Counted from the first letter of the stretch, positions 13,501 through 34,874 are shown. The stretch: 64,000 bases of DNA from Auanema rhodensis (GCA_964057225.1 OZ059897.1:5518001-5582000); one strand, 5' to 3'. The notes: generated from the sequence alone by a model not told the origin. Made by a program: numbers and translations.

Positions 13501-14179
13501 GAGCAGTTGGGTCTTACTTGTCAAATAACTTAGTTGACTAATTGTAACAGAAACAATATTCAGAAACAAAAAAATCTTTTTTTATAATTTTTGAAAGAAT
13601 GCATCAAAGCTAGTCCCATTGAAGCAGCTTGCTATTGGTCGACAGAATAGCAAAAATACGAAAACCGTCATTGCTCAGGGAAGGGGGGCGTGTTGATTAC
13701 TTTGGATGTTCAGTAGTTTGAAAGCCAAAAATGACTCAAATGTGTTGGACGATAAGAGAGATTTCTAATTTTTCCAATGCAACTGTTATGTTCTTCGAAG
13801 ATCCTCAGAAGATTTATATGGAAAAAGATAATTTTTAAACGAATTTTCTACCGAAAATTGCTTATGTACACACTCTCTCTCTCTCTCTCTCTCTGAAAAC
13901 TTTCATTATTTTCAATTACTTTCTCTTTATAACTTTTCAACAGTATTATCTATCGAACAATCTTCTTATCTATTCTTTCTACCTTTCCTCATTCAACTTA
14001 TTTCCAATACTCGTGGTTCCTTTTTCTTTTATTTAAATCTCTAAATTCTCTAAATTTAACAAACTATCTAACTTACTGTGTTCTTTTCTATCTTAATCAA
14101 GTTATTTTCTAATTGATAACAAAATTCAACAAATAACTATAAATAGATTACCTCGAGTTTCAGATTTCATCGATGACAT
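10537..14179 (-). CDS. Uncharacterised, probably partly disordered protein, at least 8 exons; 5' end may extend upstream
   Basis: In-frame exon chain MSSMKSETR/VEPCCKGHERLKPQYL/ERRENVDARLVDLEMEKRNETSR/ISQVFDHMKAG/VDVVSGLGNDTMDAGK...EYQDEG/AITQMVLVEDPEL...DDKLK/EVNDWFNKSE...KDCRTM/LRQEDHMWGVNHNQIGPID*, with canonical splice sites. The frame stays open upstream of the ATG to an acceptor near 14225. Confidence 0.75.
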
Positions 14180-15733
14180 TCTAAATGATTCTTTGGTAGT
14201 AGGAACTAACTCTTTGATCTTTTCCTAAAATTAAATTCTATTATAGATCAATTGAATTTGTAAATAAAATATTCTTCTAAACACGAACATGAAAATGCCG
14301 TTGAATTATGAACATATCAAAAGTACAAGAGAGACTAAGAGTTGAAAAGACACAAAGAAATACAGAGAGAATGAAAGAGAGAGAATGAGAGAGAGAGAGA
14401 GAGAGAGAAAAAGAGAAAGAGAGAGAGAAGATAGAAAGAAAAATACTGTAGAAGTCGAGTTGACGAGAGAGTGAGGGAGTAAAGGAGAGAATAACAAAGG
14501 TAACCATAGATGATGATCTTTTTTACTCTTTTTTTTTCCTCAAAAATTGTGTGAATGCAAGAACACGTAAATACATTAAATTATAAATATTTTGTGAAAT
14601 ATATAAAGAAAAATAAAAAAATTATGTGGATTTGTGATACATGCATATGTAAAATAATTTTTCTAAAAGTAAATGTCGTTGCATAGCATGAAGAATAAGA
14701 GGCGAATTGAAAGAAACAATTCAGTAGATCAGAGATCTATGTTTGTTCCTTCTTTTCCTCATTGTCTCTATTCCTTTTCTCTTTTTGGTTCGTTATTTTT
14801 ACTCATATATTCCTTCTAAATTCTCTTTCTTTTTTTCTTCTCTCTATCTGCCTATCTATTTATCTCTCTATCTCTTCCTCTCCCTCTCTCCCTTTCTCTT
14901 TCCTTATATATATGTATGTATATATAGGTTTTTGTATGTTTGAAAGAGATAAACGTCTTGGATATTTGACAAAAAAAATAAAAAATCTATTATAATATAA
15001 GAATATGATAACTATTATTGAAATTAAATATATGTATATTGAGAGTTATATTAATAAATTTCAAAAATTTTACTTATTGTTATTTGAAAATAAAAAAAGT
15101 TTATACAATAGATAATGAACTTATGATGAAAATATGACAAGTTGTTGGAAAAAAAGTGAAAACAATGAACATTGGATTGGATGGGAAGTCCGATGGGGTC
15201 GTAAGAATATAACGAAATAACAAATAATAAGGATTGTAACTAAGAGAATTACAAAGCTAATGAATTCCTAAAAGAAAATCAAAAAACGAAATCTGCAGAG
15301 CATTATGGGCCAAACATCGTGAAAGCTCTTTGGTCGATGTCAATGAGGCAAGATGGAGTTGAATTTGAATTTATATTTTCCCAATGCTTTCGTCCTTTTC
15401 GCCAGGTCCTGTTCTCTATCCTATATCATATATTCGAATGAAAACATAGAACACTTTAGTGAACGAGAGTATATGATGGTGATCATGGTTGTAGCATATA
15501 AAAAAAAGAAAAAAGAAGACGAAGATGATGAAGACGAAGAGGAGAATTGAGATGAATTTTCGTTGTCAACAACTTTAGTGATCGAATGACAGAAGAGCCG
15601 ATTTGCAAAACAGAATCTCTGTTCAGAACAAAAGTTTTAACCAGCTAAGGGCACCTGTGAAACTTGAAAACTCTTCCTATATTTCTGCGGTTCTGGCGTT
15701 TGCCCTTTCTCTCTCTCTGTCTCTGTCTCTCAG

Positions 15734-15764
<31 letters not shown>

Positions 15765-18700
15765 GTTCATTCTGATTGATTAAAAAATAAATATTTGGTA
15801 CAAGCAAAATAAAGTTTTGATTTCAATTCTTATCTTTCATAAAGCTTTAACTACATAAGTTTATGTTATTTCATATTAAAATATTAATAATTTATATTTT
15901 AAATAAACATATAAAAAAAAGAAAAAAATAATCCATTTATGAATATAAAAATTGAGAAATAATAACCAAATGTGGATGTTTAATAGTTAGAATAACATAT
16001 GAAACAAGCAATGTTAAACAGATATCTCAAAAACATACAAATGAACACAGCTGATATAAAAATATTTGAAATATAATATGAAAGTATTATTAAGAATTTC
16101 AAGTGATTTTTGAAACTTATTCGTATAGGTAAAAGGGTCCAGCCCATCAATTCCGCTCAAATGCATTTCTTTTTTTTCCTGAAAAATGAGAAACATAAAG
16201 CTTGATGATTATAGATCCCTCAACATTACAAGATATGTGAAAGTCAAATTTCTTAATTTTTTGAAGATGAAAGAATGGAATGAGAAGTTGTAATGTCAAC
16301 AGCAAATTATGGGAAAAATCGTATTGCTCTTCATGAAAACTGTTGATTAAAACTATTTTTTGTCATCTTTGTTCATCGAAAAAAACCAAATAAAAACTCT
16401 TTTAATTTAGATTCAACTGTTGAAATATGAGAAGAAGCGTTATGAACTGTCACGCTACATACATGTGCTGTCAACTATATATTCATCTGATTACCAAATT
16501 TCATGTCTTCACAATTCATCTAATTTTCGTCTCTTTTCTTTCTCATCCTCTTCCAAGCTCAGTAAGATCTTCTTTTACGTGTCGAATTCAACGGCTATTG
16601 CATTAAGTACTTTAAAGAAATTTCCACAGATATACTCTATCCTTCCCTTGTTTTATATTTCAATTTCATCTAATTAACAATCGTTTTCCATTTTTTTTAT
16701 TTCTTTCATTCCAATTAGACGAAATGGCTTAGCTACTCATCTTTTTTTCTTAATCTTACTGTCAATCATTCTACTTGTTATTCTCTTTTAAACACATTTT
16801 TTCTTAAAGATTTCTATGCTATTCCTTTTCTTTTTTTATTTTAAATTTTCTTTTATAATTATTTCCGAAATGAAGATTTGTCAAACTACATGAAACATTC
16901 TGTTTTTTCTCTTTTCATTTTCAACAAATTTGTTATGTATATTTCTAGATTTTTGTATCAAAAATTTTATTTCTAAATTTAAATAACTTTTCATCAAAAC
17001 TAATATTTTTATTCTTTTTTGTAAACTATTTATTAAATTTTTGAATAATAAATTCTACAAATTGTCATTTTTACATATTATTACATATATTATAATAATA
17101 ATATATGGATAGATATAGAATATTTCTATATTATAATTAAAATTTATTAATTATTTCTAAATATTCTTTTATTATATGTATATTGTAGAAGAAAATAACT
17201 ATTTCACGTTTATAATTATCATATTATTGTCATAAACTGTAGGATTTAAGAACGAAAAACAAAATAAAACCATATAGTATTCATAAGTGGAAATATGGAG
17301 AAATGGTTGAAAACATTGTTGAGTAATCAAATACAGTATCAGATGAAAACAAGAACTTGCAGATTTCTTTGAAAGTATTCTCCAAGATGCTGATATTCAC
17401 GTGAACAACTTCTTTCATTCACGTGTTTACCTAGTATTGGCCGATCCATATGATTAGTCGCTAGATTCTTTCCTTCATTTCTCTCTCTCTCTCTCTCTCT
17501 CTTTTCATCTCTGTCTCTATTCGTCTTTCTACTTCCCTCTTTTCTCTCTTATCATTATATTTATATTCTTCTGACCCTTCCGTGGTATTTCTCTGTAGTT
17601 TCTGACCAATCTGATCAACTTTCATATTTATTGTTGTGACTCGATAAATGTCGACTTATAGTTCGTCATTCATTGCATTTCCTTTGAAACGTTTGATATT
17701 TCTTCATTCACCCTTTATGTTTTTATAATTTTTATTTTCATTATATATAGATTTGCCGTAGAAATATTTAGTAATGTTGCAAGTATGAGACTAAATTCAA
17801 ATCTTAAGGTTCAAATTCAATAGTTAGAGAAAGTATTTGAATTAGGTGGCATCATGATTAAGCTTTGTACCGAGATCTTCTAAGTGTTCTGCTCAATAAA
17901 CCTTGTTCTGCTAATTAATATAATTTGATTTTATCTTTAGAACATCTTGAATTAGCAAAATGTTAATCTCAACCACTTCAAAGTTATATATTTCTCTATT
18001 TCTAACTGATTTTCCTTTATAAAATATCCTTTACATGCTCATTTGTCTGAATTACTCATGTTAAATGCATCTTATCTACATGTTTCTGCTGTATCTTTGC
18101 AAATGCATCCTATCCAATATTTGGAGCGGTATGGTTCTTGAGCAGACAGCAGAGTGCATTGCCAACAACAAGCCTCCTGACCTAGTAAAAGGACACAATT
18201 ACGTTGTATACAAGGAAAAAATCGAAAAATAATGAATATAATGTGTAATGAACGACTTCTGGAACAATCATCAACCCTTAGCATTTATATAAACTGTGTT
18301 AATTGAGCTGAATATGAAAAACATGAATGATATATAGGCTGTATGAGTATGCTAGTTGTGTCATATCAGTTCAAAATATCTCGTAATCGGTAAAAGACTA
18401 CTCGTCTTGTTGTCTTAATCATTCAAGATTATCAATAGGCGTTCTTCCTTTTTTCATTTTCTTTTATTTTATTTCTTCGTTTCTTCATCTACTTCTTCTG
18501 CAGATTCTTAAAAGTATTATACCCACATATGTGTATATTTATATTTTTAATTTAATAGATAGGCTTTTCTAGATTATGTTCAGCTTTTAACTTTATTGCT
18601 TTAAGTCATTTTCTTTATTTTCTTATTTCTTGTAATAATTTTTTTTGTTCGTAATTTACTTTTCAAATGAAAATTTGTGTAAAAAAAGCATTTTTTTAGT

Positions 18701-18945
18701 ACTTTTTCAATTTAATTTTCAATTTTTATTAATTTTGATCTTCCTTATTAATATATTAATGTTATATTTTGTTATTAATGTATTTTGAAGATATAATTGT
18801 AAAAGAGAATAGAAAAAAAGTTCATTCTAAGTTCATTTTTCCAAGTATTTAAGAATTTTGTTTACCAATTGTTTCAGTTTTTCTAGCATTTTTTTCTCTT
18901 CAAACCAGGTTTAATCATTTTTTTATTTTTTTACAGCTTCTACTA

Positions 18946-21900
18946 ATGCCTGCAACACTGATTCTTGGAGGTGATCGCTTAGCCTTCACGTTGGCACGTC
19001 TTTGTAAGTTGTTTTGTTATAATAGGCATAGATTAACTTTTTATTTTGGTTAAGTATATCATATAGTTTATATCATATATTATAATTTATTTTTGTTCAT
19101 TTAGTGTGTTCTTCGGGAGAACGTGTATATCTTATGGGAAGTGTACAGAAAACTAAGGCTATTATGACCGAACTTTTGCAATCTGATGTTGAAAGAGATC
19201 ATCCTTTTCAGCTAATTGATGATCTCAGAGTATGCGATACAGATAAATTTAATTGATATAGTTAATTGAAATTTTAGAATCAAGAACATTACCTTAAGAA
19301 ACGATTGGAAAACATCCAGTTCTGCAACCGTATGGAAGAAGTTGGCAGAGATCTGAAGGCTGTTGTTGTTACTGATAATTGTATGTATTTGATAATATAT
19401 TTGATAATATATATCTTTTTTAGCAAATGAATTGAATGTACATAACTTTGGTTCTGTACCAGTGGCTAATTTCCAAGAAGATTGCTCAAGTGTTTCTAAC
19501 TGTATTGATGTGAAAGCTTACCAGCCACTAGAGCTGACGAAGATGGCTCAAGTTAGTTCATTTAATATTTTTCAAATTTCGTATACTTCTGTCACAACCA
19601 ATGGCTTATGTATGTATGTTTATCCACAATTATTGTGTAAACAACCATTTTAAAGTCAAAAGCACGAGGAGACTCCTGAAAATGTTAACAGTTGAACTGA
19701 AAGAATATTTATGAAAAGCATTGTTATACGTCTTTTTTGGTACAAAAAATGCTTTAATAACCAAGGTGGAACGAACTAACATGGCAACGGAACTAACGTC
19801 AACATCGCTATATTATTATTTATCTAAACGATGAAAGACTTTAAATGAATGGAAGTCAAATATGTTTCGAGTCATTTTCTTTGAACTAATGATCCTTGTT
19901 CTTTGATGATTTCGTGCTAAATACTAAAGAGCATAATGTTCCAAATGATGGGAAATCTTGACGAAATATATTCAGAATTGTGAAATACATGTTCAGCACG
20001 TTGCCATAAGATGTGTTTTTTCCGTTCAAAGTACATGAATCTTGGATTGAGCTGAGATAAGAAAAATAGATTAATTTTAAAAGTTGATGGTTTAAAGCGT
20101 TCGGTTGTTAATGCTTTAGATTATTGTGGAACAAGCTATGATAGTAGATTTTGGGTGCAAGTGAGGAGATAAACTCTATAGAGAAGAAGATTGTTTGATG
20201 AATAGATAGCTTGTAGAGTAAGAAAGTTTATAAGACAAAAACATTGAAGGAAAGATTGAAAGGGTAGAATGAGTGGTTTGGTAAAAGTACTGGGACAACG
20301 GACAACCAGAACATATTTTTATCTGTTAACATGTGAAGATTCGATTACAATATTTATGAAGAAAAAAAGGGAATAAAAATGATTAATAGAAGACTAAAAA
20401 AGTTATTTTGTTATTCAGCTATATAAGATGATATACTGATTAGCTCTTCAAGTATTTATAACATACTTTTGATTATTCATTTCTTTGAATTTTGAATTCA
20501 AATACATTTTATTACAACTTTTTTGTGAATCTAAAGACGGAGAATCATCAGGCATTAAGCCTTTCAAGCGCCTTGTGCTTACTTCATTGTATAATCAACA
20601 CTACGCTCATCTACATCATTCAACCACTCATTCTCTCTTATACTATCTTCATTCCTTCTTCCCACTCCTTTACTTGCCATCTTTCGAATGCTTCTGTTTG
20701 CTTCATTAGAAGGCTTATCGGCATTGGGAACATCGTCCCAATCAGACGCTTTCATATCGGGAACTACCATGCCAGTAGCTCTATGCTTTCTCAACTTGAA
20801 TACTCTAATGGACGTATTTATATTTTTTTCCGGCAATAATAGAATCTTATGCTTACTTTATTTTGAAGATTTATGCTTCATATGCATATTATAGTTTTCA
20901 CGTGAATCACGTGAATCACGGGTCAGATAGAATATCACAATTCATTTTTAAAATTTTCATTAAACAGAGCGGTTGTGTCGTACTACTTGCTCCCTGCTTT
21001 TCTAATACCATTCTTGCAGTTTTATCTGAACATCTCTTAAAGTTATTCCTACTTACCAATTTGGAGAGATATTGGCATCTAGAGAAGATATGTTCATGTT
21101 GTTACTAGCACAGCATGTATCCCAATCCGTAGTTCAATCAACACTCATTCGAGCTTGGTCAATGTGCATGGGTCATGTGGTTGGCCAGATGTCACATGTC
21201 CTTTCAAGGCATAAAAAGTCTGTTCATGAGAAGAGACGGATAGCAGCAGCAGTTGCGCTGGTCTGAGTAGTAGTAACACCAAAACCAACAGCACTAGACG
21301 TACTCAATAGCCAATCCTCGCTTCATGATCACTTTCTCTCTCTCTCCCTCTCTCTCCCTCTCACTCTCCTTCTGCATCCATTTTCTATCAATCGTTCCCG
21401 TTTTAGCTATCTCTTTCCAATCCACTCTCTGATTCAGGAATACTATTTCAATTTGCTTTCATGTTAGCCACCATCGGATTACATAGTGTTGAGAGCTAAA
21501 TAGAAATTAATTTTCTTCAAGATGTAGCTATGAGATGCGGAGCTAAATAGTGGGGTGAACGATTTTCTTAACATTGGAGGAAGAAAGAAAAAGTTTTTTT
21601 TCTCATTTTTTACTTTCCACTCTTCTTGAATCTCATGCCTGCTTTCTCACTTTTTTCATTTCTTTTGTGTTGAAATACTTTATTCGAAATTCAAAACAAT
21701 TTATTCATTTGTATTATATAATGAAAGATGAGAATAAGAAGAACAAAGGACAAAATAAAATATGCGAATAGTCATATAACCTTACTACGAGCCGATGATC
21801 GAGATGTTGTAATATAGTTTGCGACTGTTAACCTCTGTCAGCAAAAGGCAGAATTTTGCATCATCTTCTGCTTTGCTCTTTCTTGCCAATCTAACGCCGA

Positions 21901-24496
21901 TTTCTCTTCTTCATTCCGATCTGACCTCGTCCAGCGACCATCTGCGAGTTTTTGAGTTGTATTAAGAGGCAAAAATAAGAAGAACGTAGATGTGGAAGGA
22001 ATGAGAGGGATGTCGGCAGAAAGGTTCAATGCCAGCCAGACTTCTGCCGGTAAACAAGTATCGCCTGACCCTTCCGGTTCTGGCCGTACCCACAAAAGAA
22101 TTTTTTTATTTCAAAAAACGTCTGTAGTTAGCTACGAATAACGATGTCAGAAAACAATTTTCTGTTTTTAAATCTTTGTAGGACTAGCCTGCGCATTTAA
22201 ATGATGCTAAGCATAGTGAATTAACAATAAGAAAAATATATTTATTATATCATATAGTTAGTGAAAAGAATAAAATATACATTAACCTAACAAGAGGCTA
22301 ATAGGATTAGGTAATAGTCTGTATAAAGAGTTGTAAGGAAAAAAAAGAATGAAAAGACTAGGTCAACAAGACAATACGAGAAGAGACAAGATGATTGTTC
22401 TTTCAAATTAGCTATATATATATAATCTTTTATAATAATCCAACTTAACCCTCGTGAGAAAGAATACAAAAAAATGTATTTTTGCATCGTCTATCACGTT
22501 ATTTGATATATTCGTGACAAATTGTGGGTCTGTAATTTGCTTTCGTGCATTCATATAAGGAAATACGTTATGAGGTTATACATAGATGATTATAAACTAG
22601 TAATTATCATAACTATAGAGAGATATAATTATTTATATTTATTGGCCCATTGATAATATATAATTTCTACAAAAAATAAAACAAACGGAACAAATTGAAC
22701 AAACTGTCATTCTTCATTTTTCTCAAAGGTCCATTCGCAGAAAGAATACTGTGATATCAAACTCAAACCGATTTCACTAGAATCTTCCTACTAACGGACG
22801 TTTGGACAACTATGAATGAATGACAATGGCTGGGAATTTGCGAGGAACTGACAATGACAAGAAGTGTTTTTTTGGAAGCTCAATGACTGAAGAGAAGGAA
22901 TTAACCGGATCATTGTGGCTAGCATTGAAACGCTGTGCAACAACAGGAACTGTGATACCTTAGAGAAGCCCATCGGCACCGGTATATACGGATCCTGTCA
23001 TCGAACAGAGATTCAAAAGCCATATTACTGGATGAAGGAAGTGATATTCTGGTTAAAGTTAAGTACAAGTCAGTATGAATAACATAGTAAATAAACGAAA
23101 CGATCAGTTCGAATGACGACGATGAGGAGGCGGTGGATGAGAAAAGCAGATGAATGATGAATTACTGAGATTTGCGGGTGAATTGAAAGATAATAATGGA
23201 AATATAATCGCTATATTCCGTATGATGACTTGACAAAGTAAAGCTAATGAATTGAAATATTGTGGACTTTAGACATTACGAAGTAGCTTATTACGCACTT
23301 CAATACATATCACCATCAATGAATCAGAAATCATTTTAACATAGCCTAACATCGGAATTAAAGACCGAAGACAGCCTAATCCACTCCTCAAACCTCCTGC
23401 TGATATATAGGATTGTTGTGGAGGCGGAGCTTGAAGTAGGCGGAGCAATAACAACCATGTTACTTGCGGTCATTTTTTGAAGTTGATAAGTTGGGAAAAA
23501 TGCCAAATAGTAGGCATCTCTTCAGGTTATATATGAAGTAACAATGTGGTTCACAGCGGAAAAGATCAGAAAGTTACTAAGATGGTAACAAGAAAGTTCG
23601 AGGAAGGAAGAACTTAGAAACTACAACGATGTTACTGGCGGGCACGATTTATGCTGAGCAACCTACGCACACTTTGTGGCATTGGCTGAGAATCAGTGAA
23701 AAGGAGCAGAGTGAATACTCGATTTCTAAGACGATGCAGAAAATGGAAGGAGTATCTTGATGATAAGAATTTCAAAGAAAACAAGAGTATTGGGTACAGG
23801 AAACCATGTAAGATCTAGATAGGAAGAATGATGTGGGTGAGGGCGAGTTGAGTTGAGTTGAACAGAATGAGGAGGAGAGAGATGAGAGCGATAAAGGGGG
23901 GTGAAGAAGAGTGACGAGGAGGTTAGCTGTAGCAGCTGTGTTGGTCGGCCTCAACATAGAAAAGATACTTCGTTAGAACATCTGGCAATCCATTGGGTCT
24001 GGTCATCCCTCTTTTCCTTCATCTTCCACTGTGTTTCGCTCTTTGAGGCTTAGCCTTGTGCTGCTCTCCCCGCTGTCCATCTTCTCTTCATCTTGCTTCT
24101 CTATCTGACTCTGATTTCCATTTGATCTCTCTCATTATCGTCTTGTGTTCTGTGCTCAATATATTTGATTCGAAAGCTAGTTTCGTTATTTCCTATGGAC
24201 TTATGTCGTCGTTTTCTTTTTTTTTTCACAAACATACATACAAAGAAAATAGAAGGAATAATCGAGGATTGGTTTAATGATCTAAAGGGAGAGCAAATTT
24301 TCAATATGAATAAGATATATGATATAGTTAGCTATATAATATTTTGAGGAAGAAAAAATTAATTGAATGTCATTCAAACTGACCACATATACATGATTAC
24401 CCAAATTGTCTTGTTTTTCCACAAAATCAATGAGAATAGAATATACATATAAGAGAATGAAACTAGGAAAGCGGAAACTGTTTACGAGTGTATGAA

Positions 24497-24558
<62 letters not shown>

Positions 24559-26551
24559 GTTAATAGCAACTAAGTTAAGTATGCATATACATATAGTACT
24601 CTATCTCGAGACAGTAAGTATGAAACAGCAGGAGGAACAGATGTTACACACCGTATGTCCCATGGAGATATAATGTATAGAATTATCGATGGATGAGATT
24701 CTTTGATTGGCATCTCAATAGAATAATCGAAAATAATGTTTTTATGGAAAACTAATCAAGAATGTGATTATCTGTATGTGACGATCTACATATATACTCA
24801 AATGAATAATCTTTCGTTATTCAGATTTCTCATAAAGAATTGAGAATGTGATATTACTATCTTTGGATTTTTTGTTTATATTAAAAGTGGCTACTGCTCT
24901 AAAGGATATGGTTTTGACATTCGCAATGTCTCCTACAAATGGCTTGAGCATTGAAATTGCCGACATCATTGCCGACATTTTCTTTTTCTGTTAGCCGTCC
25001 GGAATTACTAGCGGATCAGACCGATCCGTTTTGGGCAGACATGCTACGAAGTAAGGCAGCTGGGCCATATTTCGAACGTATTTGTATGTGTATCAACAGG
25101 AAGCAATATTGCCTGCACGTACTGAAGAGCTTTGTCTTCTGTGGCTCTCATTCTTACATTCTCTTTACCCTCTATTTCTTCAGTCCCCCCCCTCTCTTTT
25201 TCTTTATTGCTTACTCTTAAATTCTGTTCTTCCCACTGCCTCATCTGTCTATGCTGGCTGCATTGTCATCGATGTTAGCCAGCTAGTAAATGGTGCTTTC
25301 TTCCGTTTCTAGGCTTAGTCGTCATCTGATTCATGAGGTCAATTGTTTTTCCGTCAACTGGTCAGCCCTTGAATCTAATAGTCGACCACATGGCTGCCTT
25401 AGTCAAGCTCCGCCCCTCAGGCAGCATATATGGTGGTCCTAATGCTAATCGAGATTGTTCGTCATACTATTTCGCTTTTTTCTCTCTGTCTCCATCTTTC
25501 TATTTCTCCATCTGCTCTCCTTTCTACAATTCTCTTTCTTCTATATCTAGCTATTGCTCGTTCTTATTCTACAGCATGCTTCCCACCCTCTCCTCTCTCT
25601 TGGAGTACGAGAAAGGAAAGCAGTAGTTAGAGAGAAATAGACAGATTGAGAGTGAGTCGACATATACAGAGTCAGGGAAGCAGGGAAAGAGCTGGACCTC
25701 CTCCATTCAGCCATATCCTCTTCCTTCTATCCCCCTAACGCTTGCTGCTGCTTGAAGCCATTTTTGGGTGCCCTCAAGGCACCTACTCTTATATTCTTAG
25801 ATTCATTGAATGTGATTTCATGACTTCTACGACCATGAACATTATGACAAGCCTCATATGACATTCATTATTTTGACAATTAGATTCAAGTCAACCATAC
25901 AATTCCAGCTGATACAATGCTATTCTTCTAGTAGCTCATATTCAGTCCCCACGCTCTCCCCTTCTGGACGCCAAAATCTAAAAGTTCACTCTCTATACAT
26001 TTATCTTTATGCACTTAACTTGGTCGTTCGATTACAGGTTCTGTAGAATCCAATGTACTTACCGGTTTCTCAGACCCTGTATTCGATCGGCTCAAGTTTA
26101 CAGTTATATATCAGAAATATTCAATGTAGCAGCAATGTTTTCAATCAGAGTAGATACACATAGCTCGATTATACATCATTGTCCAAATAGTTGTGACAGT
26201 TTCAAAAGACTTTAAACATAAAATGTGCTTTTCTTGCATAATAATAGCTTTTCTGTATTCAGATTCTGGTACAACCATCTACAGATCCTACAGCATTGTC
26301 ATGTATTCGTACTTTACTTGAAAATGCTGGAATCAGTGAAATCACAAGTGAACAGGCTAGTACAGCCAATGAGTAAGTTTAAGAACAATTTGATATAAAT
26401 TAGAAAAATATTTCTAATAAATATTTGCAGAATGATGGAAAATTCCAAAAATAAAGGATTCGAAGGATCTGTATCAAACATGAATAACATCATCTTTTCG
26501 CTATTTCCCCAGCGAAAACCAATTGATCATACTCATTCAATCATGCACTAA
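18946..26551 (+). CDS. Degenerate Rossmann-fold protein resembling the 3-hydroxyacyl-CoA dehydrogenase NAD-binding domain, about 215 aa, 6 exons, with a 6.7-kb intron 4 (19552-26262)
   Basis: MPATLILGGDRLAFTLARLLCSSGERVYLMG forms a beta-alpha-beta start. The chain continues LKKRLENIQFCNRMEEVGRDLKAVVV, YQPLELTKMAQ|ILVQPSTDPTALSCIRTLLENAG (resembling the HADH 'NPV..M.LVEV......T...' segment) and ends HTHSIMH*. Splice phases match across the long intron. Confidence 0.65.
22729..22799 (-). ncRNA. Pre-miRNA hairpin 2, miR-2/miR-43 seed family; predicted mature 3p UAUCACAGUAUUCUUUCUGCGA (22756-22735)
   Basis: GUCCGUUAGUAGGAAGAUUCUAGUGAAAUCGG-uuugagu-UUGAUAUCACAGUAUUCUUUCUGCGAAUGGAC forms an imperfect stem of about 27 bp. 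It carries the same seed as hairpin 1, 200 nt away on the same strand. Confidence 0.85.
22924..23016 (-). ncRNA. Pre-miRNA hairpin 1, miR-2/miR-43 seed family; predicted mature 3p UAUCACAGUUCCUGUUGUUGCA (22957-22936)
   Basis: The 5' arm CUGUUCGAUGACAGGAUCCGUAUAUACC pairs with the 3' arm GGUAUCACAGUUCCUGUUGUUGCACAG, with an extra basal stem UUGAA/UUCAA. The seed starts near the loop on the 3' arm, as in miR-2-family precursors. Confidence 0.75.
23403..23446 (-). promoter_or_regulatory. Putative core promoter of the antisense pri-miRNA (two GC boxes plus TATA)
   Basis: The minus strand reads GCTCCGCCT-N8-GCTCCGCCTC-N11-TATATAT about 400 nt upstream of hairpin 1. A minus-strand AATAAA lies at 22643-22638, downstream of hairpin 2. 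Confidence 0.45.
24498..24555 (+). repeat. (GA)n microsatellite
   Basis: About 28 GA units. Confidence 0.95.
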
Positions 26552-29207
26552 CTGAATTTTAATCTAATTACTCAGTAACTCTTCACTCCAATCTTAACAA
26601 CTTGTATTTATAAAATCAAAGTTAAACTTTGAAATAGAATAGAATGAAGAATCAGACTCAGTTTGTTGTAATTATACTGTGCTATTCTGCTAATAAATTA
26701 TCTTCGTTCCGTATAGTTTTTACTATATTTGCCATCTAATATTTTTTTTAAATATTGCAAAAACTTCAAAGAAAAAGCAATGTTTTTGCAAAAATACAGG
26801 AATATCGTACAGCGACTTATGCTAGTTTGAAATCAAACAAATAAAATATGTTTAAAAGCTTCAAAGAAAGAAATGAAAAAATATTTTTATGAAAATATTT
26901 ACGTGAACCTTACGTGTCAGGTTTTCATTTTAAGGTGACATTGCTGCAGAAATGGTTGATTCCGCTGTGGAGATGAAGCAAGTTTAAGATTTTTATTCAA
27001 AAAAAAAGAAAGAAAGTGTGAAATTTGAAAAAAATTTATTATATACTATATTTCCTTTTATTCTGGATAACCTTCTCCCATTTTTCTTTCAGCTTTCCGA
27101 TTCCGTTTCTGAAAAATATTTTACTTTTAGATGCAAAAAATATAAATAAATAGACTTTTACTTATTTTCTTTCTTTTCGTATGTTTGAATTTTTAAAACT
27201 AAAAATAAAAAATAAAATATCTAACTCAATTCTATCTTTCTTACCGCAGTTGCAACTTTGAATTCAAACTTAAAGTTATAACTTTATTTAAAACTTAAAT
27301 TGATATTCCATTTATTAATAATCATCATCATTATGTTGTATACATATAAATAACATAAAATTATATTTTGATCACGATGTTCAGCTTCAAGTTATCAATG
27401 AGTTGTATGGAATTACATGCGTTTTTGCAAAAATTCATTTTTTTTAGTGATAAGAGCTTTAAGACAAATATAATATTTTTAAAACAAACAAAAGAAATAT
27501 GAACTTAGGATGATCCAATATATGTTTTGAAAGAGTTTTGTCCCATTTATAGATTTGTTATTTTCGTATTCAACTACTGTATTAATGCCTAAGTCTTCAG
27601 AATTTGTTTTCAATTCACTTTTTGTTCATCACTCAACCGGAAAAAACCGTTTTGAAGTACATGTTCAACAATAATTTATTTTATAAAATTAAAATCATTC
27701 TAATTATAATTCATTAATTTGAATAACTATTTATATAATACTATAATAATAGTTTTCTTTAAAAATTTTTTTTTGTCAAAATTCTTTTCCATTTCTCTAA
27801 GTTCCAAATAAATTCGCAAAATGTGTAATCATGTTTGCCAATTAACTGTAATCTTACCTAACCGGAAACAATTTTTTGTTTGTAATTACTGACTGATTTT
27901 TGAAAGCTTATCGACAAATATAGTTTTATAGTCCATCCTTTTTAAATAATTTATTATAGTTTATAAAGAAAATTAATGTTTTAACATGTATTCTTAATAT
28001 TTTTTGATCGATTTGGTTTATAGATTAGTCTACGAAAGCCTATAAATCTTTCATCTTTGCTTTTTTCTCTTTCTATCGTAACCAAAGCAAGTTTTTAACC
28101 ATTATGAACCGAAAAAATTAATGTTGATCCTTTTTTAAAGATGTGTTGTCCTTCGTTTACAAAATACTTAATTCGATTTCGTCCAAAGTACATAGATAAT
28201 TTAACCAAAAATTCTTTTTTTTCTTCACTTTATTCGGATCTTTATGGAAACATCATGACGATAATTGTTTTATGATACTTACAAGTTGTAACATGAAATG
28301 GAATTTCATTCATTTTTCCTCTTTATCAATCTTTCTAATTCAATGTTTCTATTAATCTTAAAAGATTTTAATATCTATTTAATAAAAACCTGATATATTC
28401 ATAATGTTTAAGCCTTATTTATGCTTTATATTTTTAAAATAAAAATCAATTTAATAATCTTGATATTTTTTCATTTGAATATCAAAATAATATTTTTGTC
28501 TAAATCTTTCAAGATATATAATGACGTATAGTTTATTATTAAAATTATTATAAATATATATATACTGTATTCATATGACATAAATAGTATTAAGCACTAT
28601 TTATCACTTATATTCCTATTACTATCATCAATTAACCCTCCGCCCCTCTCTTTCTATATATATATCTTCTCTTTTCTTTTCCTTTTTTTTTGTTTGTTAC
28701 TGATCATTCTAATTTTCTGTTCATTTCTTTCTTCATATTCCTGAAATTTTCGTTTTCTTTTTAAACTTTTAGTTTCATAAAATGTTTAATCAAAATGTAA
28801 CCTGGAACTTTCCTTAAACAAGTTTAAATATCGTTAACTACATGTCATCAATAAAACATTCTCACTTTCTTCTTTATCGTTTCAGCCATTTCCTCTTTCA
28901 TGATCAAGTTCATCATTGGATTATTCGTTTATTCTATATGTTTGTGAGTCTTGTATTTATATTTCAGAACGTCCTTAGTGCCATTAACGAAAACCCAAAA
29001 CTATGAATAGAGAAAGTAAAAAAAAAAGAAAAAGAATCAAAAAAGAATATGTGTCTATAGAGAAACAGAGAAAAAGAATGAGTCGAATAGTGGATGTAGG
29101 CAATCTGGAAGTAGACATAATAAAGTAAAAGCATAAGAATTATAAGCTGAATTCAATTCCGCTGTCGTTTGAGTTAACTTCTAGGTACCAGCTTTATTCA
29201 TGCTTGA

Positions 29208-29673: not shown

Positions 29674-32648
29674 ATGTTCCGTCAATCATGGTTCACATCT
29701 CTTTTTCGTAAGAAAACATTTCAAAATGGTGAGTACAATCTTTATCTTTTATTTCTATTCATCTATACCATGTTTTAGATGTTTTGTCTACCAATTTGAA
29801 GCGATGCCTATCCACTCTAGATGTAACATGTCTAGCTTTAGGTCAGATGATCGGCGCTGGAATTTACGTACTTACAGGTTTTATTCTCACACTTGTACTT
29901 TTCTAACATCTATAATTAGGAAATGTCGTTCGTGAAAAAGCTGGACCATCTGTTGTATTTTCCTTCTTATTCGCTGGTATTGCAGCTCTTCTATCAGCTT
30001 TCAGTTATGCTGAGTTTGGAGCCCGGTAAGTGCTAAGACAAAACAGTTCTCTCTGATTACAGTTGTTCTCATTATAAGAAGAAAATGATTTTATAGGTTT
30101 CCTCGAGCTGGAAGTGCTTATACGTATACATACGTAGGAATTGGAGAAGTCTGGGCTTTTGCCATCGGTTGGACAGTTATTTTGGAATACATGATTGGCT
30201 CTGCAGGTATAAATTATATTTTATATACTTTTGCATACATATAAAAATATTTTTATTATATTTAAAAAACTTAAATTGTTTTTTTTTCAGCCGTAGCACG
30301 ATCATGGTCGGGATATTTTGATTCGTTGATTGACAATCGAATTCAAAATTGGACTATTGAAAACCTTGGTCGATTAAGCGGAGTAAGTTCTTAAGTTTAT
30401 AAAATTGAATAATAGAAATATGATTTTGAACTAACTTTTATTTCTTTTTTTATAGGACAATGGTTTCTTCAGCAACCATTTTGATCTTTTAGCTTTTGTA
30501 CTTATCTGTTTATGTGCTATAGTTATTGCAAATGGTGCAAAATCGTCAGCTACCTTCAATACTATTTTCGTTTTTATAAATTTGGCGGTAATTGACTGAA
30601 TAACGAATATGAAAAAAGTAAAAGACAACTTTTCTATAGATTTTGGGCTTTGTGATTGTGTCTGGATTCTTATATGCTGACTTTAGCAATTGGTTTGGAA
30701 CAACTTCAACGGGAGTTTCAAAGTAAGTTATGGTTACATTCAGTGAATCAAATTGCTGCTCTACCTGAAGTTCAACATTCAATGTTTCAAGCCTATTGTT
30801 TTCCTTACTTATAGATTCTTTCCGTATGGACTAGGTGGCACATTAGCTGGAGCTGCAACGTGCTTCTTTTCTTTCATCGGATTTGAAATCTTAGCTACAG
30901 CAGGAGAAGAAGCTAAAAGTACAAAAATTTACAAACAAACATCTGAAACAACAATATGTTCTTACAGACCCTCGTACAGCTATTCCAATTTCAACGTTTT
31001 TATCTTTGGGATCTGTTACCTTAATATATATTCTGATGGGATCAGCATTAACATTGATGGTTCCATATGATCAGGTATGATTCAATATCATTAAATTAAC
31101 TTGATTTCAAAAAATAATCATAAAATAGTTTTCAATTCAATAAGAAAAGTATAATATAAACTGAATCGCTTAGCGTTTTTTTACGTATTTTTCACGTAAA
31201 CTATTGACGTCACTCACGTGTAATACTCATTTCCTTCAAAAAATATCTGTTGCACGGTTGCTTTTTCTTGAAATTCTAATAATAAAAATAGTAAATTATT
31301 GAATTTTTCCAGATTAGCTCAACTGCTGGATTCGCGGATGCTTTTCAAAGTCGTGGAGCTACCGTCGCACGTTATGTTGTAACCATTGGCGCATTAGCTG
31401 GAATGACTAATAACTTGGTATGTTTTAAGTTAAAATAATTGTATTTATTTATTATGATATTGTTTAGTTAACAAGTATTTTTGCTTTACCAAGAGCTGTC
31501 TATGCAATGGCTTCAGACGGTTTGATTTTCAGCTTCTTTGCTACTGTCAATAAACGTCTTCAGGTATGATATTTCTACATAATCATAGAACAAAATATTA
31601 TTTTATACTATCAGATTCCATTGAATGCCGTCATTGTATTTACTCTTATTAATGCTTTATTTGCTGCTGTATTTGATCTTGATACTCTTATCGAATTCCT
31701 TTCTATAGGTAAAATTTATAATCTTTTAAGTATTAAAATAATAATTATATTTGAAGGAACATTAATGGCTTATTCATTTGTTTCTGTATGTGTTATTCTA
31801 TTAAGATATGAAATACATGAACAGGGAGAAGGTATTTAGAATAATATTAATAGATTAAAGAATATATTCATTTGTATAGAAAATCGTTTAAAGAATTGGG
31901 TACCAGCTCATAAAACAATAGAATCTTTTACACGAGGATGTTCTGTTATCTATAGTTTAGTCATTTTAATAATTGGCTTCTTCTGGATTGCATTAACTAT
32001 TCGAATAGGTATGTAATATATTAATTTATAATTAACTATGTGTGATGTACATGATGAATGTTATAATATTTCATCTATTTATATAATTATTTAATTTCAT
32101 TTAAGCTGGGATCGACACTAATGTAGGAATAGTAAATCTAGTCAGTGGTACATTCATAAGCTTGATTGGTTTCATAGGCTTACTGTCACATGAGCAAAAT
32201 AATGACAACTTAGCGTTCAAGGTACAGCAGGATATAGAGAATATTTACAAATACAATACATATAGTTGAAATTACATGAGATAAAGATTAATTTTTGATC
32301 AGAATTTCGAAAAAAACAACTTTTTTTTTTAAATTATAAACAAATTTATTTATAATAAATTATATATTTAGGTGCCTCTTGTGCCATTGATACCAAGCAT
32401 ATCACTTCTAGTTAACATCTTCATGATATCTTACTTAGATCCTTTAACCTGGGTTCGATTAGTTGCATGGATGGTTATAGGTAATTAAATAACTTATTTC
32501 ATATAATAAATAATCTAAAAACACATAATATATTTTCTTTTTTTAAGGATTTGTTATTTACTTTGGATATGGATATTTTCATAGTGAAGAAAGAAAAAAA
32601 GCTAAAAATTCAACAAGTCAAGTATATCCTGAATCAATCAAATTGTAA
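29674..32648 (+). CDS. Cationic amino-acid transporter (SLC7A1-4/CAT family, APC superfamily), paralog 1
   Basis: Motifs [97 protein letters not shown] and TWVRLVAWM, across about 16 exons. Confidence 0.95.
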
Positions 32649-34874
32649 AATCAACATAAAACAATATATAATATTATAATTATTATTATATGAATTGAAA
32701 TATTGTATTGTATTCATGAAAATTGGTTGCTCTTTACTGAGTTCTTTGAGTTTTATTGAAATTTTGTATTCGCATTAGTCAACCTAGTCGGCTTGAACGG
32801 GTTGTTCTACTTAACCTTTCCATATTTCTCTTTTCTTTTTCTCTTTGTCCCTTTCTCTTTCTCTTATTTTCTCTCTCTTTCTCTATCTCTTTTTGATTAT
32901 CTCACATTTTCTTTGAATATATTTCGTTATTCCCTTTCAATACCTCCTCACACCTTTTCTCTCTACTATTCTTTTCTACTCGCTCTCTCTCTCTCTCTCA
33001 TCTTTCTACCTATATCTGGCCGCATTTTTAAAAACTTTTTTTTCAATTTTTGAATGTAATTTGCAAAATATAAATAAAATTGTTTTATTTTTATGATATA
33101 TATAGATATGTATATGTATTTATGTATAAATGTTTCTATATTCGTTTTTGGTTTCTTTTCCAAAAAAAAAATGAAATAGTTATTGAAAAAATGAGTAAAT
33201 TCATACAATTTACGCCTCATAGATCAAAGACATTGAAATGCAAAAATAATTTGAAGATTAAACTCAGTTATTATGGGTTACAAAAGGTGTCAGCATTCAT
33301 CACACAGATCATACAACAGACCAACAGACTAAAACGGATATCCAGTTATACCATTAAGTCAATCGGTTGCTAATTCAGTTAGCGTGTGCGGTACTCACAC
33401 ACAATGTCCTCGTACATCATCATTTTTTGAACTTTTTAGTTCGTTATCATTGGCTTCTCTGAAGTACACACAGAGAAACATTTATTCAATTTTATTTTCA
33501 ATCTTTTATCATCACTATCATCATATTTCTATCCAAAAATCTATATGAATATTCTAAATATATATATATATATTCTCAAATAGTATTATGGTAGTAAGTA
33601 TAGGTTAAAATTGATGTTAGATGTCAACTAATGTCTAGTATATTATATATATATATATGCATATATAACTATATAACTATATATGAAAATAACATGAAAA
33701 TAAAAATAAATTGTGGTAAAAGTACTACAGTAATCTCAACATCTTCATTGAAATATTTTGAAAATCATCTTAACCTAACAAGTGGATCATAAGTGATTTA
33801 TCACCATATTACTTTTATTCAATATATATGTTGTTAGCCTTTTAGCCTCCTTTGTTTTTGCTATCTTTTATAACTTGATCCTTTAGTTTAAGCCTAAGCT
33901 TCAATAAAAAAACTTGGAATGTACTTACATATTGGTATAAAGAGTGAAAAAGAGATGAAACATGACTTCAGTTGTATCAACTTGATGATAATTCTTCTTC
34001 ATATTTATTCATAGTTTTCCACCAGATTATAGTTTTCTGTCGATTATATTTCTCTTTGTAATCATGTGATATTCACAAGAATTTGAATAATTATTCATTT
34101 AGTTATATACAAGCATTTAAGTTACATCGAAAGATAACATTTTTATATTTACTGAAACTATTTTTGTATTTTTTTGAATATTTTCTTCTTTTTTTTGATC
34201 TTTGTATCAAATATTATAATATTTTCATTATAAATCATCATCATCTACATCATTATCATCTCTTTCTTTATGTGAATTGATACATCTTGATCTCTGAATA
34301 CACATACATACTATATAACATTATCAAATCCAGTAGTTAGTTATCCTATAGTTACCAGGACATATAACTATAAATATAAAATTTTATAAATTTATATTGT
34401 ATGTGATAAAATATAAAATATCCATATATACATATTCATATTTCATTTTAAAACAAAAACTTATAAAAATCATGTATAAATAATATTATAAGTCAATTAA
34501 AAGTTTCAACAAAGGACGTCGTCAATTTGAAATTTTTTCCAAATCTGTACCTATCTATCCGGTTTTTTTTCTTTATTTCATATTATATACATATATGTAT
34601 ATGTATAGATATGAAAAGATAAAGAAGAATTTAGATATCAATTGATTTTGATAATAAAATCTTGTAATGAAAAGCACGTGAATTTAGATATATCTTCATG
34701 CTTTACATAGAACTGGATCATTTAGTCCAAAATGTTCTATCATATTGACCAGATGGCATGCCAGCTTATCATCTAAGTTATTCAGAATTTCTCATTTAAA
34801 TATTTTATATTCTATAATTTTTCTTATATTTTATGCTTGATTAGATTGATAATAACCTTTTTTTTCTTTTAAGT

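What the first reader, a model, noticed from the sequence alone, without database searches (positions are those of the whole stretch)
22620..23446. Antisense intronic cluster of two miR-2/miR-43-seed microRNAs with unfamiliar 3' halves
Seen: two long imperfect hairpins 200 nt apart on the minus strand, each with UAUCACAGU at the start of the 3' arm, flanked by a GC-box/TATA block (23446-23403) and AATAAA (22643-22638). That implies a pri-miRNA of about 750 nt. Known: AUCACAG is the miR-2 family (K-box) seed, shared by nematode miR-2, miR-43, miR-250 and miR-797. Inference: the mature 3' halves (UCCUGUUGUUGCA; AUUCUUUCUGCGA) match no member I recall, and I found no miR-71, miR-42 or miR-44 partner hairpin. 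This looks like a lineage-specific, independently transcribed cluster nested opposite a coding gene.
Basis: partly seen in the sequence, partly recalled or inferred. Interest (0 to 1): 0.85.

Follow-up and report, generated by a model that had tools for sequence, protein, structure and literature searches.

The report
Conserved antisense miR-2-family microRNA pair
Two real, unannotated microRNA genes of the well-known miR-2 seed family lie antisense, behind their own conserved promoter, in a large intron of a small Auanema gene; they are new members of a familiar family, not a new kind of element.

Summary
Two minus-strand hairpins (23008-22933 and 22804-22724) are the most stable hairpins within 6 kb. 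Each carries UAUCACAGU at the 5' end of its 3' arm.

A collinear locus from Auanema sp. JU1783 settles the question. Both predicted mature arms are 22/22 identical and both star arms 20/23, while loops and flanks have diverged. Only 12% of the surrounding intron aligns at all. All seven stem substitutions keep the base pairs.

The upstream block (two CTCCGCC boxes plus TATA) is also conserved. The pair lies antisense in a 6.7-kb intron of a plus-strand gene of about 218 aa with no known family.

Three things are not shown:
- Expression: the only served runs gave uninformative low-depth contigs.
- The transcript ends: the AATAAA is not positionally conserved.
- Lineage specificity: hp2 is 17/22 identical to bma-miR-2d and 16/22 to cel-miR-43, and synteny is lost outside Auanema.

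Clusters of miR-2 paralogues and divergent 3' halves are already documented in nematodes, so I file these as new members of a known kind, of modest interest.

This scan earlier found the same architecture (an antisense intronic mir-64-family cluster with its own TATA promoter) elsewhere in this genome. It also holds unchecked notes on other mir-42/43/44 clusters.

A third conserved hairpin (26019-26098) with no family match lies in the same intron.

The parts
23383..23481 (-). Conserved core-promoter block of the miRNA transcription unit. It holds AAAAAATGACC (23478-23468), two CTCCGCC boxes (23445-23439 and 23429-23423), TATATAT (23409-23403) and the conserved ATCAGCAGGAGGTT just downstream. 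The TSS is inferred near 23380-23375.
   Evidence: Sequence. CTCCGCC occurs 4 times against 0.51 expected. The composite motif occurs twice against 0.02 expected. The block aligns to L006 5908-6007 with both boxes, the TATA and the downstream motif conserved. The TSS was not measured.
22933..23008 (-). Hairpin 1 (pre-miRNA-like). Predicted mature 3p is UAUCACAGUUCCUGUUGUUGCA at 22957-22936. Predicted star (5p) arm is about 23003-22981.
   Evidence: Fold dG -38.8, z -3.6. The JU1783 orthologue L006 5645-5747 folds the same way, z -4.9. Identity is 22/22 in the mature arm, 20/23 in the star arm and 16/25 in the loop. All 28 consensus pairs are kept, with 4 one-sided changes. The minus strand is 7.5 kcal/mol more stable than the plus strand.
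22724..22804 (-). Hairpin 2 (pre-miRNA-like). Predicted mature 3p is UAUCACAGUAUUCUUUCUGCGA at 22756-22735. Predicted star (5p) arm is about 22791-22769.
   Evidence: Fold dG -32.6, z -3.5. The JU1783 orthologue L006 5540-5622 folds with z -4.3. Identity is 22/22 in the mature arm, 20/23 in the star arm and 5/12 in the loop. All 28 pairs are kept, with 2 one-sided changes and 1 compensatory change. There is a weak sub-threshold Rfam mir-43 hit of 20.4 bits, E 0.63. The minus strand is 11.6 kcal/mol more stable.
22638..22643 (-). AATAAA, a candidate poly(A) signal 79 nt after hairpin 2. The evidence is weak.
   Evidence: Present in the window. In JU1783 the first AATAAA is 293 nt after hp2, so the position is not conserved. 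Contigs of two runs run through it down to 22464/22492, but the nature of those runs is unknown.
18946..19554 (+). Host gene, exons 1-4: 18946-19014, 19104-19232, 19278-19376 and 19423-19554. It encodes a small protein with no known family.
   Evidence: tblastx/blastn conservation with JU1783 at 64-83% amino-acid identity, with substitutions biased to one codon position (13/4/1 by coordinate mod 3) in exon 1. The start coincides with the annotated JU1783 gene start, L006 3962. There is no Pfam hit.
26263..26551 (+). Host gene, last two exons: about 26263-26373 and 26462-26551 including the stop. The intron 19555-26262 between exon 4 and these exons contains the antisense miRNA unit.
   Evidence: 76% and 86% amino-acid identity to JU1783. 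The end coincides with the annotated gene end, L006 8233.

Best explanation
This is a bicistronic microRNA gene of the miR-2 seed family in an Auanema-group rhabditid nematode.

Inferred mechanism:
- RNA polymerase II starts about 30 nt downstream of a conserved CTCCGCC-CTCCGCC-TATA core promoter, near 23380 on the minus strand.
- It transcribes antisense to the large intron of a small plus-strand protein-coding gene.
- The primary transcript carries two hairpins about 200 nt apart.
- Drosha/Pasha crop them about 11-13 bp above the base of the stem and Dicer removes the loops.
- The 3' arms (UAUCACAGUUCCUGUUGUUGCA and UAUCACAGUAUUCUUUCUGCGA) are loaded into miRNA Argonautes. Their 5' ends lie in weak A-U pairs, whereas the star strands begin in G-C pairs.
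- With the seed AUCACAG they would repress mRNAs carrying K-box-type sites (CUGUGAU), like other miR-2, miR-43 and miR-250 members.
- The differing 3' halves could give each paralogue its own supplementary pairing or turnover behaviour.

What is shown: the hairpins, the seed position, the strand preference, purifying selection on arms and structure, promoter conservation, and the antisense-intronic placement.

What is inferred: transcription, the exact cleavage sites, Argonaute loading and the targets.
For: - The seed 9-mer sits at the start of the 3' arm in both of the two best hairpins of the region.
- The orthologous locus in Auanema sp. JU1783 is collinear with the window.
- Both mature arms are 22/22 identical, within uninterrupted identical runs of 26 and 29 columns.
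- Star arms are 20/23 identical, loops 16/25 and 5/12, and the flanks are much lower.
- The spacer between the hairpins differs by about 95 nt and does not align.
- Only 803 of the intron's 6708 nt align at all.
- The seven substitutions in the 56 stem pairs all keep pairing, and one is fully compensatory.
- The JU1783 hairpins fold with z -4.9 and -4.3.
- The minus strand folds 2.6-11.6 kcal/mol better than the plus strand in all four hairpins.
- The promoter block is conserved and its composite motif is about 100-fold enriched. The only other copy lies 1 kb upstream of the neighbouring transporter gene, in the correct orientation.
- hp2 gives a full-length but sub-threshold match to Rfam mir-43. 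It is 16/22 identical to cel-miR-43 (sequence from PMC3105410) and 17/22 to bma-miR-2d (PMC4019659 supplement).
- In nematode miR-2 families the mature strand is on the 3' arm, and 3' halves diverge between paralogues (PMC4019659, PMC11648932).
Against: - There is no expression evidence. The three served runs are low-depth contigs of uncertain type with nothing on the hairpins.
- No Rfam family reaches its gathering score, and hp1 has no Rfam hit even at E<=10.
- Conservation rests on only two species.
- The AATAAA is not positionally conserved.
- The exact 5' ends of the mature RNAs are predicted, not measured.
Confidence: 0.85

Rival explanations
1. The two hairpins are not lineage-specific novelties. 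They are diverged orthologues of already named nematode miR-2-family genes (for example the lineage of cel-mir-43 or bma-miR-2d for hp2) that have been relocated and lost their miR-35/miR-44-type partners.
For: hp2 shares 9/13 positions beyond nt 9 with bma-miR-2d and 7/13 with cel-miR-43 and bma-miR-2e, where about 3/13 is expected by chance. It also gives a full-length weak match to the Rfam mir-43 model. hp1 shares its first 11 nt with hgl-miR-43 and min-miR-2b.
Against: The Rfam score of 20.4 bits is far below the gathering score of 54. hp1's 3' half is near chance against every verified member. No partner seeds lie nearby. Unchecked scan notes place canonical mir-42/43/44 clusters elsewhere in this genome. 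miRBase and MirGeneDB could not be searched.
Confidence: 0.3
2. The hairpins are real miRNAs but are not transcribed from the proposed promoter. They would be processed from a longer minus-strand transcript that starts further upstream, possibly beyond 26100 and including hairpin 3 read on the minus strand.
For: Hairpin 3 folds well on both strands. No TSS data exist. Several other conserved non-coding blocks lie between 23900 and 26100.
Against: A TATA plus double CTCCGCC block, conserved in sequence and order, sits about 370 nt upstream of hp1 in the window and about 190 nt upstream in JU1783. The same composite marks the neighbouring gene's upstream region. Hairpin 3 is slightly more stable on the plus strand in both species.
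Confidence: 0.1
3. The conserved hairpins are structured elements with another role and are not processed into miRNAs. They could be regulatory structures of an antisense lncRNA or of the host intron.
For: No small-RNA evidence was obtainable. Only two species were compared.
Against: The conservation is asymmetric in the miRNA-specific way: the 3p arm is perfect, the 5p arm nearly so, and the loop is free. The perfectly conserved arm begins with a canonical family seed in both hairpins. The stem length and lower stem fit Drosha substrates. G-U pairs make the structure specific to the minus strand.
Confidence: 0.04
4. The hairpins and the seed matches are chance features of AT-rich non-coding DNA.
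For: Two TATCACAGT matches in 64 kb arise in 11% of shuffles.
Against: Both lie at the same structural position of the two best hairpins. They are perfectly conserved in an intron that is 88% unalignable. All stem substitutions preserve pairing.
Confidence: 0.01

Closest known systems
C. elegans mir-43 (of the mir-42~44 cluster), miR-2 seed family
   Same: Same seed and same first 10 nt (UAUCACAGUU for hp1; UAUCACAGU for hp2). The mature strand is on the 3' arm. hp2 is 16/22 identical to cel-miR-43 and gives a full-length match to the Rfam mir-43 model.
   Different: The Rfam score of 20.4 is far below the gathering score of 54. There are no mir-42 (miR-35 family) or mir-44 partners. Here two miR-2-family members are clustered with each other, which PMC4019659 states does not occur in C. 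elegans. The genomic context also differs (antisense intronic).
Brugia malayi miR-2 family (11 members; clusters such as miR-2d/miR-2i and miR-2h-2/miR-5839/miR-2f; PMC4019659)
   Same: It is a nematode expansion of the miR-2 family, with paralogues clustered with one another, divergent 3' halves, and the mature strand mostly on the 3' arm. hp2 is 17/22 identical to bma-miR-2d.
   Different: The Brugia clusters mostly also contain miR-36 paralogues, and the listed miR-2c/2d/2e loci are annotated intergenic. The distant clade makes orthology unproven.
Antisense intronic mir-63/64-family cluster in the IFT139 intron of this same genome (earlier scan finding s1-387514)
   Same: Same architecture: several hairpins of one seed family, antisense in a host intron, behind their own conserved TATA promoter, and conserved in Auanema.
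   Different: A different seed family and a different host gene. That report is the scan's own and I did not recheck it.
Protostome mir-2 / mir-13 / mir-71 clusters (Drosophila mir-2/13; lophotrochozoan mir-71~2)
   Same: Tandem miR-2-family hairpins on one primary transcript, with a K-box-complementary seed.
   Different: No mir-71 partner here. The 3' halves are unrelated.

Membership tests
miR-2 seed family (miR-2/43/250/797 in C. elegans) | AUCACAG at nucleotides 2-8 of the mature miRNA | tested here: met
   Both hairpins have UAUCACAG starting at the first paired base of the 3' arm. This depends on the predicted, not measured, 5' end.
miR-2 seed family (miR-2/43/250/797 in C. elegans) | Mature strand on the 3' arm of the precursor | tested here: met
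   The seed-bearing, perfectly conserved arm is the 3' arm in both hairpins and both species. This is the same arm as in the Rfam mir-43 consensus and in most B. malayi paralogues (PMC4019659).
Canonical animal miRNA gene (hairpin criteria) | Stable imperfect hairpin of about 33-35 bp with about 11 bp of lower stem, significantly better than shuffles | tested here: met
   z -3.5 to -4.9 in four hairpins. The lower stem is 11-13 bp.
Canonical animal miRNA gene (hairpin criteria) | Phylogenetic conservation with arms above loop and flanks, and structure-preserving substitutions | tested here: met
   Identity is 22/22 and 20/23 in the arms against 16/25 and 5/12 in the loops. None of 56 pairs is broken and one change is compensatory. 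Only two species were compared.
Canonical animal miRNA gene (expression criteria) | Discrete reads of about 22 nt from both arms with 2-nt 3' overhangs and homogeneous 5' ends | not testable with these tools
   No small-RNA run was served. The three runs found are low-depth contigs with nothing on the hairpins.
Rfam mir-43 precursor family (RF00795) | Covariance-model score at or above the gathering threshold (54 bits) | tested here: not met
   hp2 scores 20.4 bits, E 0.63. hp1 has no hit at E<=10. I therefore do not file either as a mir-43 orthologue.
mir-42~44 / mir-61~250 type cluster | A miR-2-family hairpin adjacent to a miR-35/36-family or miR-44/61 (GACUAGA) hairpin | tested here: not met
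   There are no CACCGGG, ACCGGGT or GACTAGA seeds between 15000 and 30000.

The most novel reading that the evidence does not exclude
The 6.7-kb intron may be a conserved nest of non-coding genes specific to Auanema. It holds two miR-2 paralogues whose 3' halves are fixed within the genus but unlike those of any described member. That could mean paralogue-specific supplementary targeting, or 3'-dependent turnover as shown for miR-43. It also holds a third, perfectly arm-conserved hairpin (26019-26098) with no family match, which could be a new miRNA family. All three are embedded among enhancer-like conserved blocks of a fast-evolving orphan host gene.
Probability: 0.3. Interest if true: 0.45.

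Novelty: new member of a known kind. Interest (0 to 1): 0.3.

Why it matters
It adds two well-supported miR-2-family genes, and probably a third miRNA of unknown family, to a three-sexed model nematode genus for which the library I searched holds no miRNA catalogue. It shows that the miR-2 family, known to expand and cluster in Brugia, also forms a homotypic cluster in a free-living rhabditid. It also documents a conserved CTCCGCC/TATA promoter driving an antisense intronic miRNA unit, the second such unit in this genome. This is useful for annotation and for studying how the 3' halves of seed-family paralogues evolve, but it does not challenge current understanding.

Tried and rejected
- Rfam at gathering thresholds found nothing in the window. 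A permissive scan gave only the weak mir-43 and mir-5 hits for hp2.
- Sequencing runs: only three small runs were served. Laying them gave scattered 150-240-nt contigs at depth 2-5, none on the hairpins. My guess that they are low-coverage or reduced-representation DNA is unproven.
- Exact mature sequences were absent from about 8.4 million full texts and from metagenome contigs.
- The 171-aa exon of the upstream gene gave no protein hits because of the length filter.
- I first judged the cluster intergenic, because no ORF of 55 aa or more looked coding between 12000 and 29600 and the transporter starts at 29674. The JU1783 annotation and exon conservation overturned this.
- Logan contigs of exon-sized transporter fragments were too short to reach the cluster.
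- The orthologous transporter loci of C. elegans, C. auriculariae and Ancylostoma ceylanicum hold neither the host gene nor a credible miR-2-seed hairpin. The one AATCACAG in L007 (15187, +) falls within the span of an annotated gene.
- A repeat or MITE origin was rejected because the region is single-copy.
- A twin CTCCGCC/TATA promoter for hairpin 3 at 25408 was rejected because the box is not conserved.
- The host exons have no Pfam or Atlas match.
- A word-based protein search on ORFs spanning the hairpins could not have reached significance.
- The cel-miR-250 sequence could not be verified from text, so I make no comparison with it.

Full report
**Observation**

On the minus strand, TATCACAGT occurs exactly twice in the window, at 22957-22949 and 22756-22748. 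The count alone is unremarkable, since 11% of shuffles give two or more matches. The placement is what matters.

A sliding fold of 20000-26000 on both strands ranks the two stretches around these motifs as the two most stable single hairpins. They fold at -38.8 and -32.6 kcal/mol (z -3.6 and -3.5). In both, the U of UAUCACAG is the first paired base of the 3' arm, and 11-13 bp of lower stem continue beyond a 22-nt mature arm. The two hairpins share little beyond the 9-mer, and the region is single-copy in the window.

- Two CTCCGCC boxes and TATATAT lie at 23445-23403.
- AATAAA lies at 22643-22638.

No miR-35/42 or miR-44/61 seed occurs between 15000 and 30000. The only miR-71-type heptamers there lie about 3-5 kb from the pair.

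**Database and read evidence**

No Rfam family reaches its gathering score. At permissive thresholds, hp2 aligns end to end with the mir-43 model but scores only 20.4 bits against a threshold of 54. hp1 matches nothing.

Laid on 20500-26000, they gave eight short contigs at depth 2-6, none between 22683 and 23757. This neither supports nor refutes expression.

**Comparative evidence**

The neighbouring plus-strand gene is a cationic amino-acid transporter with its ATG at about 29674. I reached a related locus in these steps:
- A representative search with one of its exons led to a full-length relative.
- A homologue search from that relative listed an Auanema sp. JU1783 protein, P0228, which matches this paralogue best.
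- Its locus (L006, GCA_943334845.2) proved collinear with window 12174-26549.

This also verifies, at the DNA level, the earlier scan lead that the genome belongs to the Auanema group.

Both hairpins are present in L006 on the same strand:
- The predicted mature arms are 22/22 identical, within uninterrupted identical runs of 26 and 29 columns.
- The star arms are 20/23 identical.
- The loops are 16/25 and 5/12 identical and contain indels.
- The flanks fall to 15-60% identity.
- The spacer between the hairpins is about 95 nt shorter in JU1783 and does not align.
- Only 803 of the surrounding intron's 6708 nt align at all, so neutral sequence is close to saturated.

Structure is also under selection. 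The seven substitutions within the 56 consensus stem pairs all preserve pairing: six are wobble/Watson-Crick exchanges and one is a compensatory A-U to U-A swap. The JU1783 hairpins fold with z -4.9 and -4.3. In all four hairpins the minus strand is more stable than the plus strand, by 2.6-11.6 kcal/mol, because of G-U pairs. This is the classical signature of a miRNA gene, with the 3' arm as guide strand.

**Promoter and transcript ends**

Window 23383-23481 aligns to L006 5908-6007. The alignment conserves AAAAAATGACC, both CTCCGCC boxes, the TATA element and ATCAGCAG.AGGTT.

The composite CTCCGCC-N5-30-TATAWAW occurs only twice in the window (0.02 expected). The other copy lies about 1 kb upstream of the transporter ATG, in the sense orientation. 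From general knowledge of C. elegans promoters, an Sp1-like CTCCGCCC box plus TATA is a recognised core architecture.

An autonomous pol II promoter with a TSS near 23380 is therefore likely, but it was not measured. The AATAAA is weak evidence. The first AATAAA lies 79 nt after hp2 here and 293 nt after hp2 in JU1783.

**Host gene**

I first thought the pair was intergenic. The JU1783 annotation, however, has a 218-aa plus-strand gene at L006 3962-8233. Translated comparison finds its exons conserved in the window at these positions:
- 18946-19014
- 19104-19232
- 19278-19376
- 19423-19554
- about 26263-26373
- 26462-26551

In exon 1 the substitutions are concentrated at one codon position.

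The host protein has no Pfam or Atlas match. It is absent next to the orthologous transporter in C. elegans, C. auriculariae and Ancylostoma ceylanicum, as are miR-2-seed hairpins. Synteny therefore cannot date the pair beyond Auanema.

**Family placement**

AUCACAG is the miR-2 family seed. In C. elegans the family comprises miR-2, miR-43, miR-250 and miR-797 and has divergent 3' sequences (PMC11648932).

Compared with sequences verified from papers:
- hp2 is 17/22 identical to bma-miR-2d.
- hp2 is 16/22 identical to cel-miR-43 (PMC3105410) and to bma-miR-2e (PMC4019659 supplement).
- hp1 is at best 15/21 identical to hgl-miR-43 (PMC10443972).

So neither sequence is an exact known miRNA among those I could check, but hp2's 3' half is not wholly unfamiliar.

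B. malayi has 11 miR-2 paralogues, several of them clustered with one another, whereas the C. elegans members are not (PMC4019659). A homotypic miR-2 cluster is therefore precedented in nematodes.

Unchecked scan notes place other mir-42/43/44-type clusters elsewhere in this genome. An earlier follow-up described the same antisense-intronic, TATA-driven architecture for a mir-64-family cluster.

**Verdict**

These are real, conserved, unannotated miR-2-family miRNA genes, most likely transcribed as one antisense intronic unit from their own promoter. They are new members of a known kind, and interest is modest.

Expression, the exact ends and the phylogenetic age of the pair remain to be tested.

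**Side observations**

- A third hairpin at 26019-26098 shows the same arm-perfect conservation and has no Rfam match.
- A conserved enhancer-like block lies at 25299-25448.

Noticed in passing
window 26019-26098 (= L006 7792-7871): A third strongly conserved hairpin lies in the same host intron, about 165 nt upstream of the penultimate host exon. It folds at dG -38.8, z -6.9 on the plus strand and -36.1, z -5.9 on the minus strand. Both arms are 100% identical to JU1783 (25 and 26 nt) while the loop and base have diverged. It has no Rfam hit even at E<=10. The plus strand is slightly more stable in both species. It is a candidate miRNA of an unrecognised family, with the strand undecided.
   Followed up: partly
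window 25299-25448 (= L006 7257-7402): A conserved non-coding block holds a perfect CArG-type motif (CCATATATGG), an E-box (CATCTG) and TGAGGTCA, all identical in JU1783. The CTCCGCC box next to them in the window is not conserved. It looks like a cis-regulatory module rather than an RNA gene.
   Followed up: partly
window 21165-21242, 23928-24046, 24670-24727, 25671-25781: Further blocks in the host intron are conserved with JU1783 at 77-88% identity (21165-21242 has no gaps). None has a shared open frame or a convincing hairpin. Their function is unknown.
   Followed up: partly
window 28638-28665 (+): The only other copy of the composite CTCCGCC...TATATAT in the window lies about 1 kb upstream of the transporter paralogue-1 ATG (29674). 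It is probably that gene's core promoter.
   Followed up: no
window 29674-32650 and 34900-37650 (+): The window has two tandem cationic amino-acid transporter (SLC7/CAT) paralogues. The collinear JU1783 locus has a single copy followed by a PIGA-like gene, which suggests a species-specific tandem duplication or a rearrangement.
   Followed up: partly
window 21766-22097 and 22464-22682: All three served runs hold contigs over 21766-22097, and two hold contigs over 22464-22682, although each run has only about 20 million letters. Recurrent coverage at such low depth suggests transcription or reduced-representation sequencing. I could not tell which.
   Followed up: no
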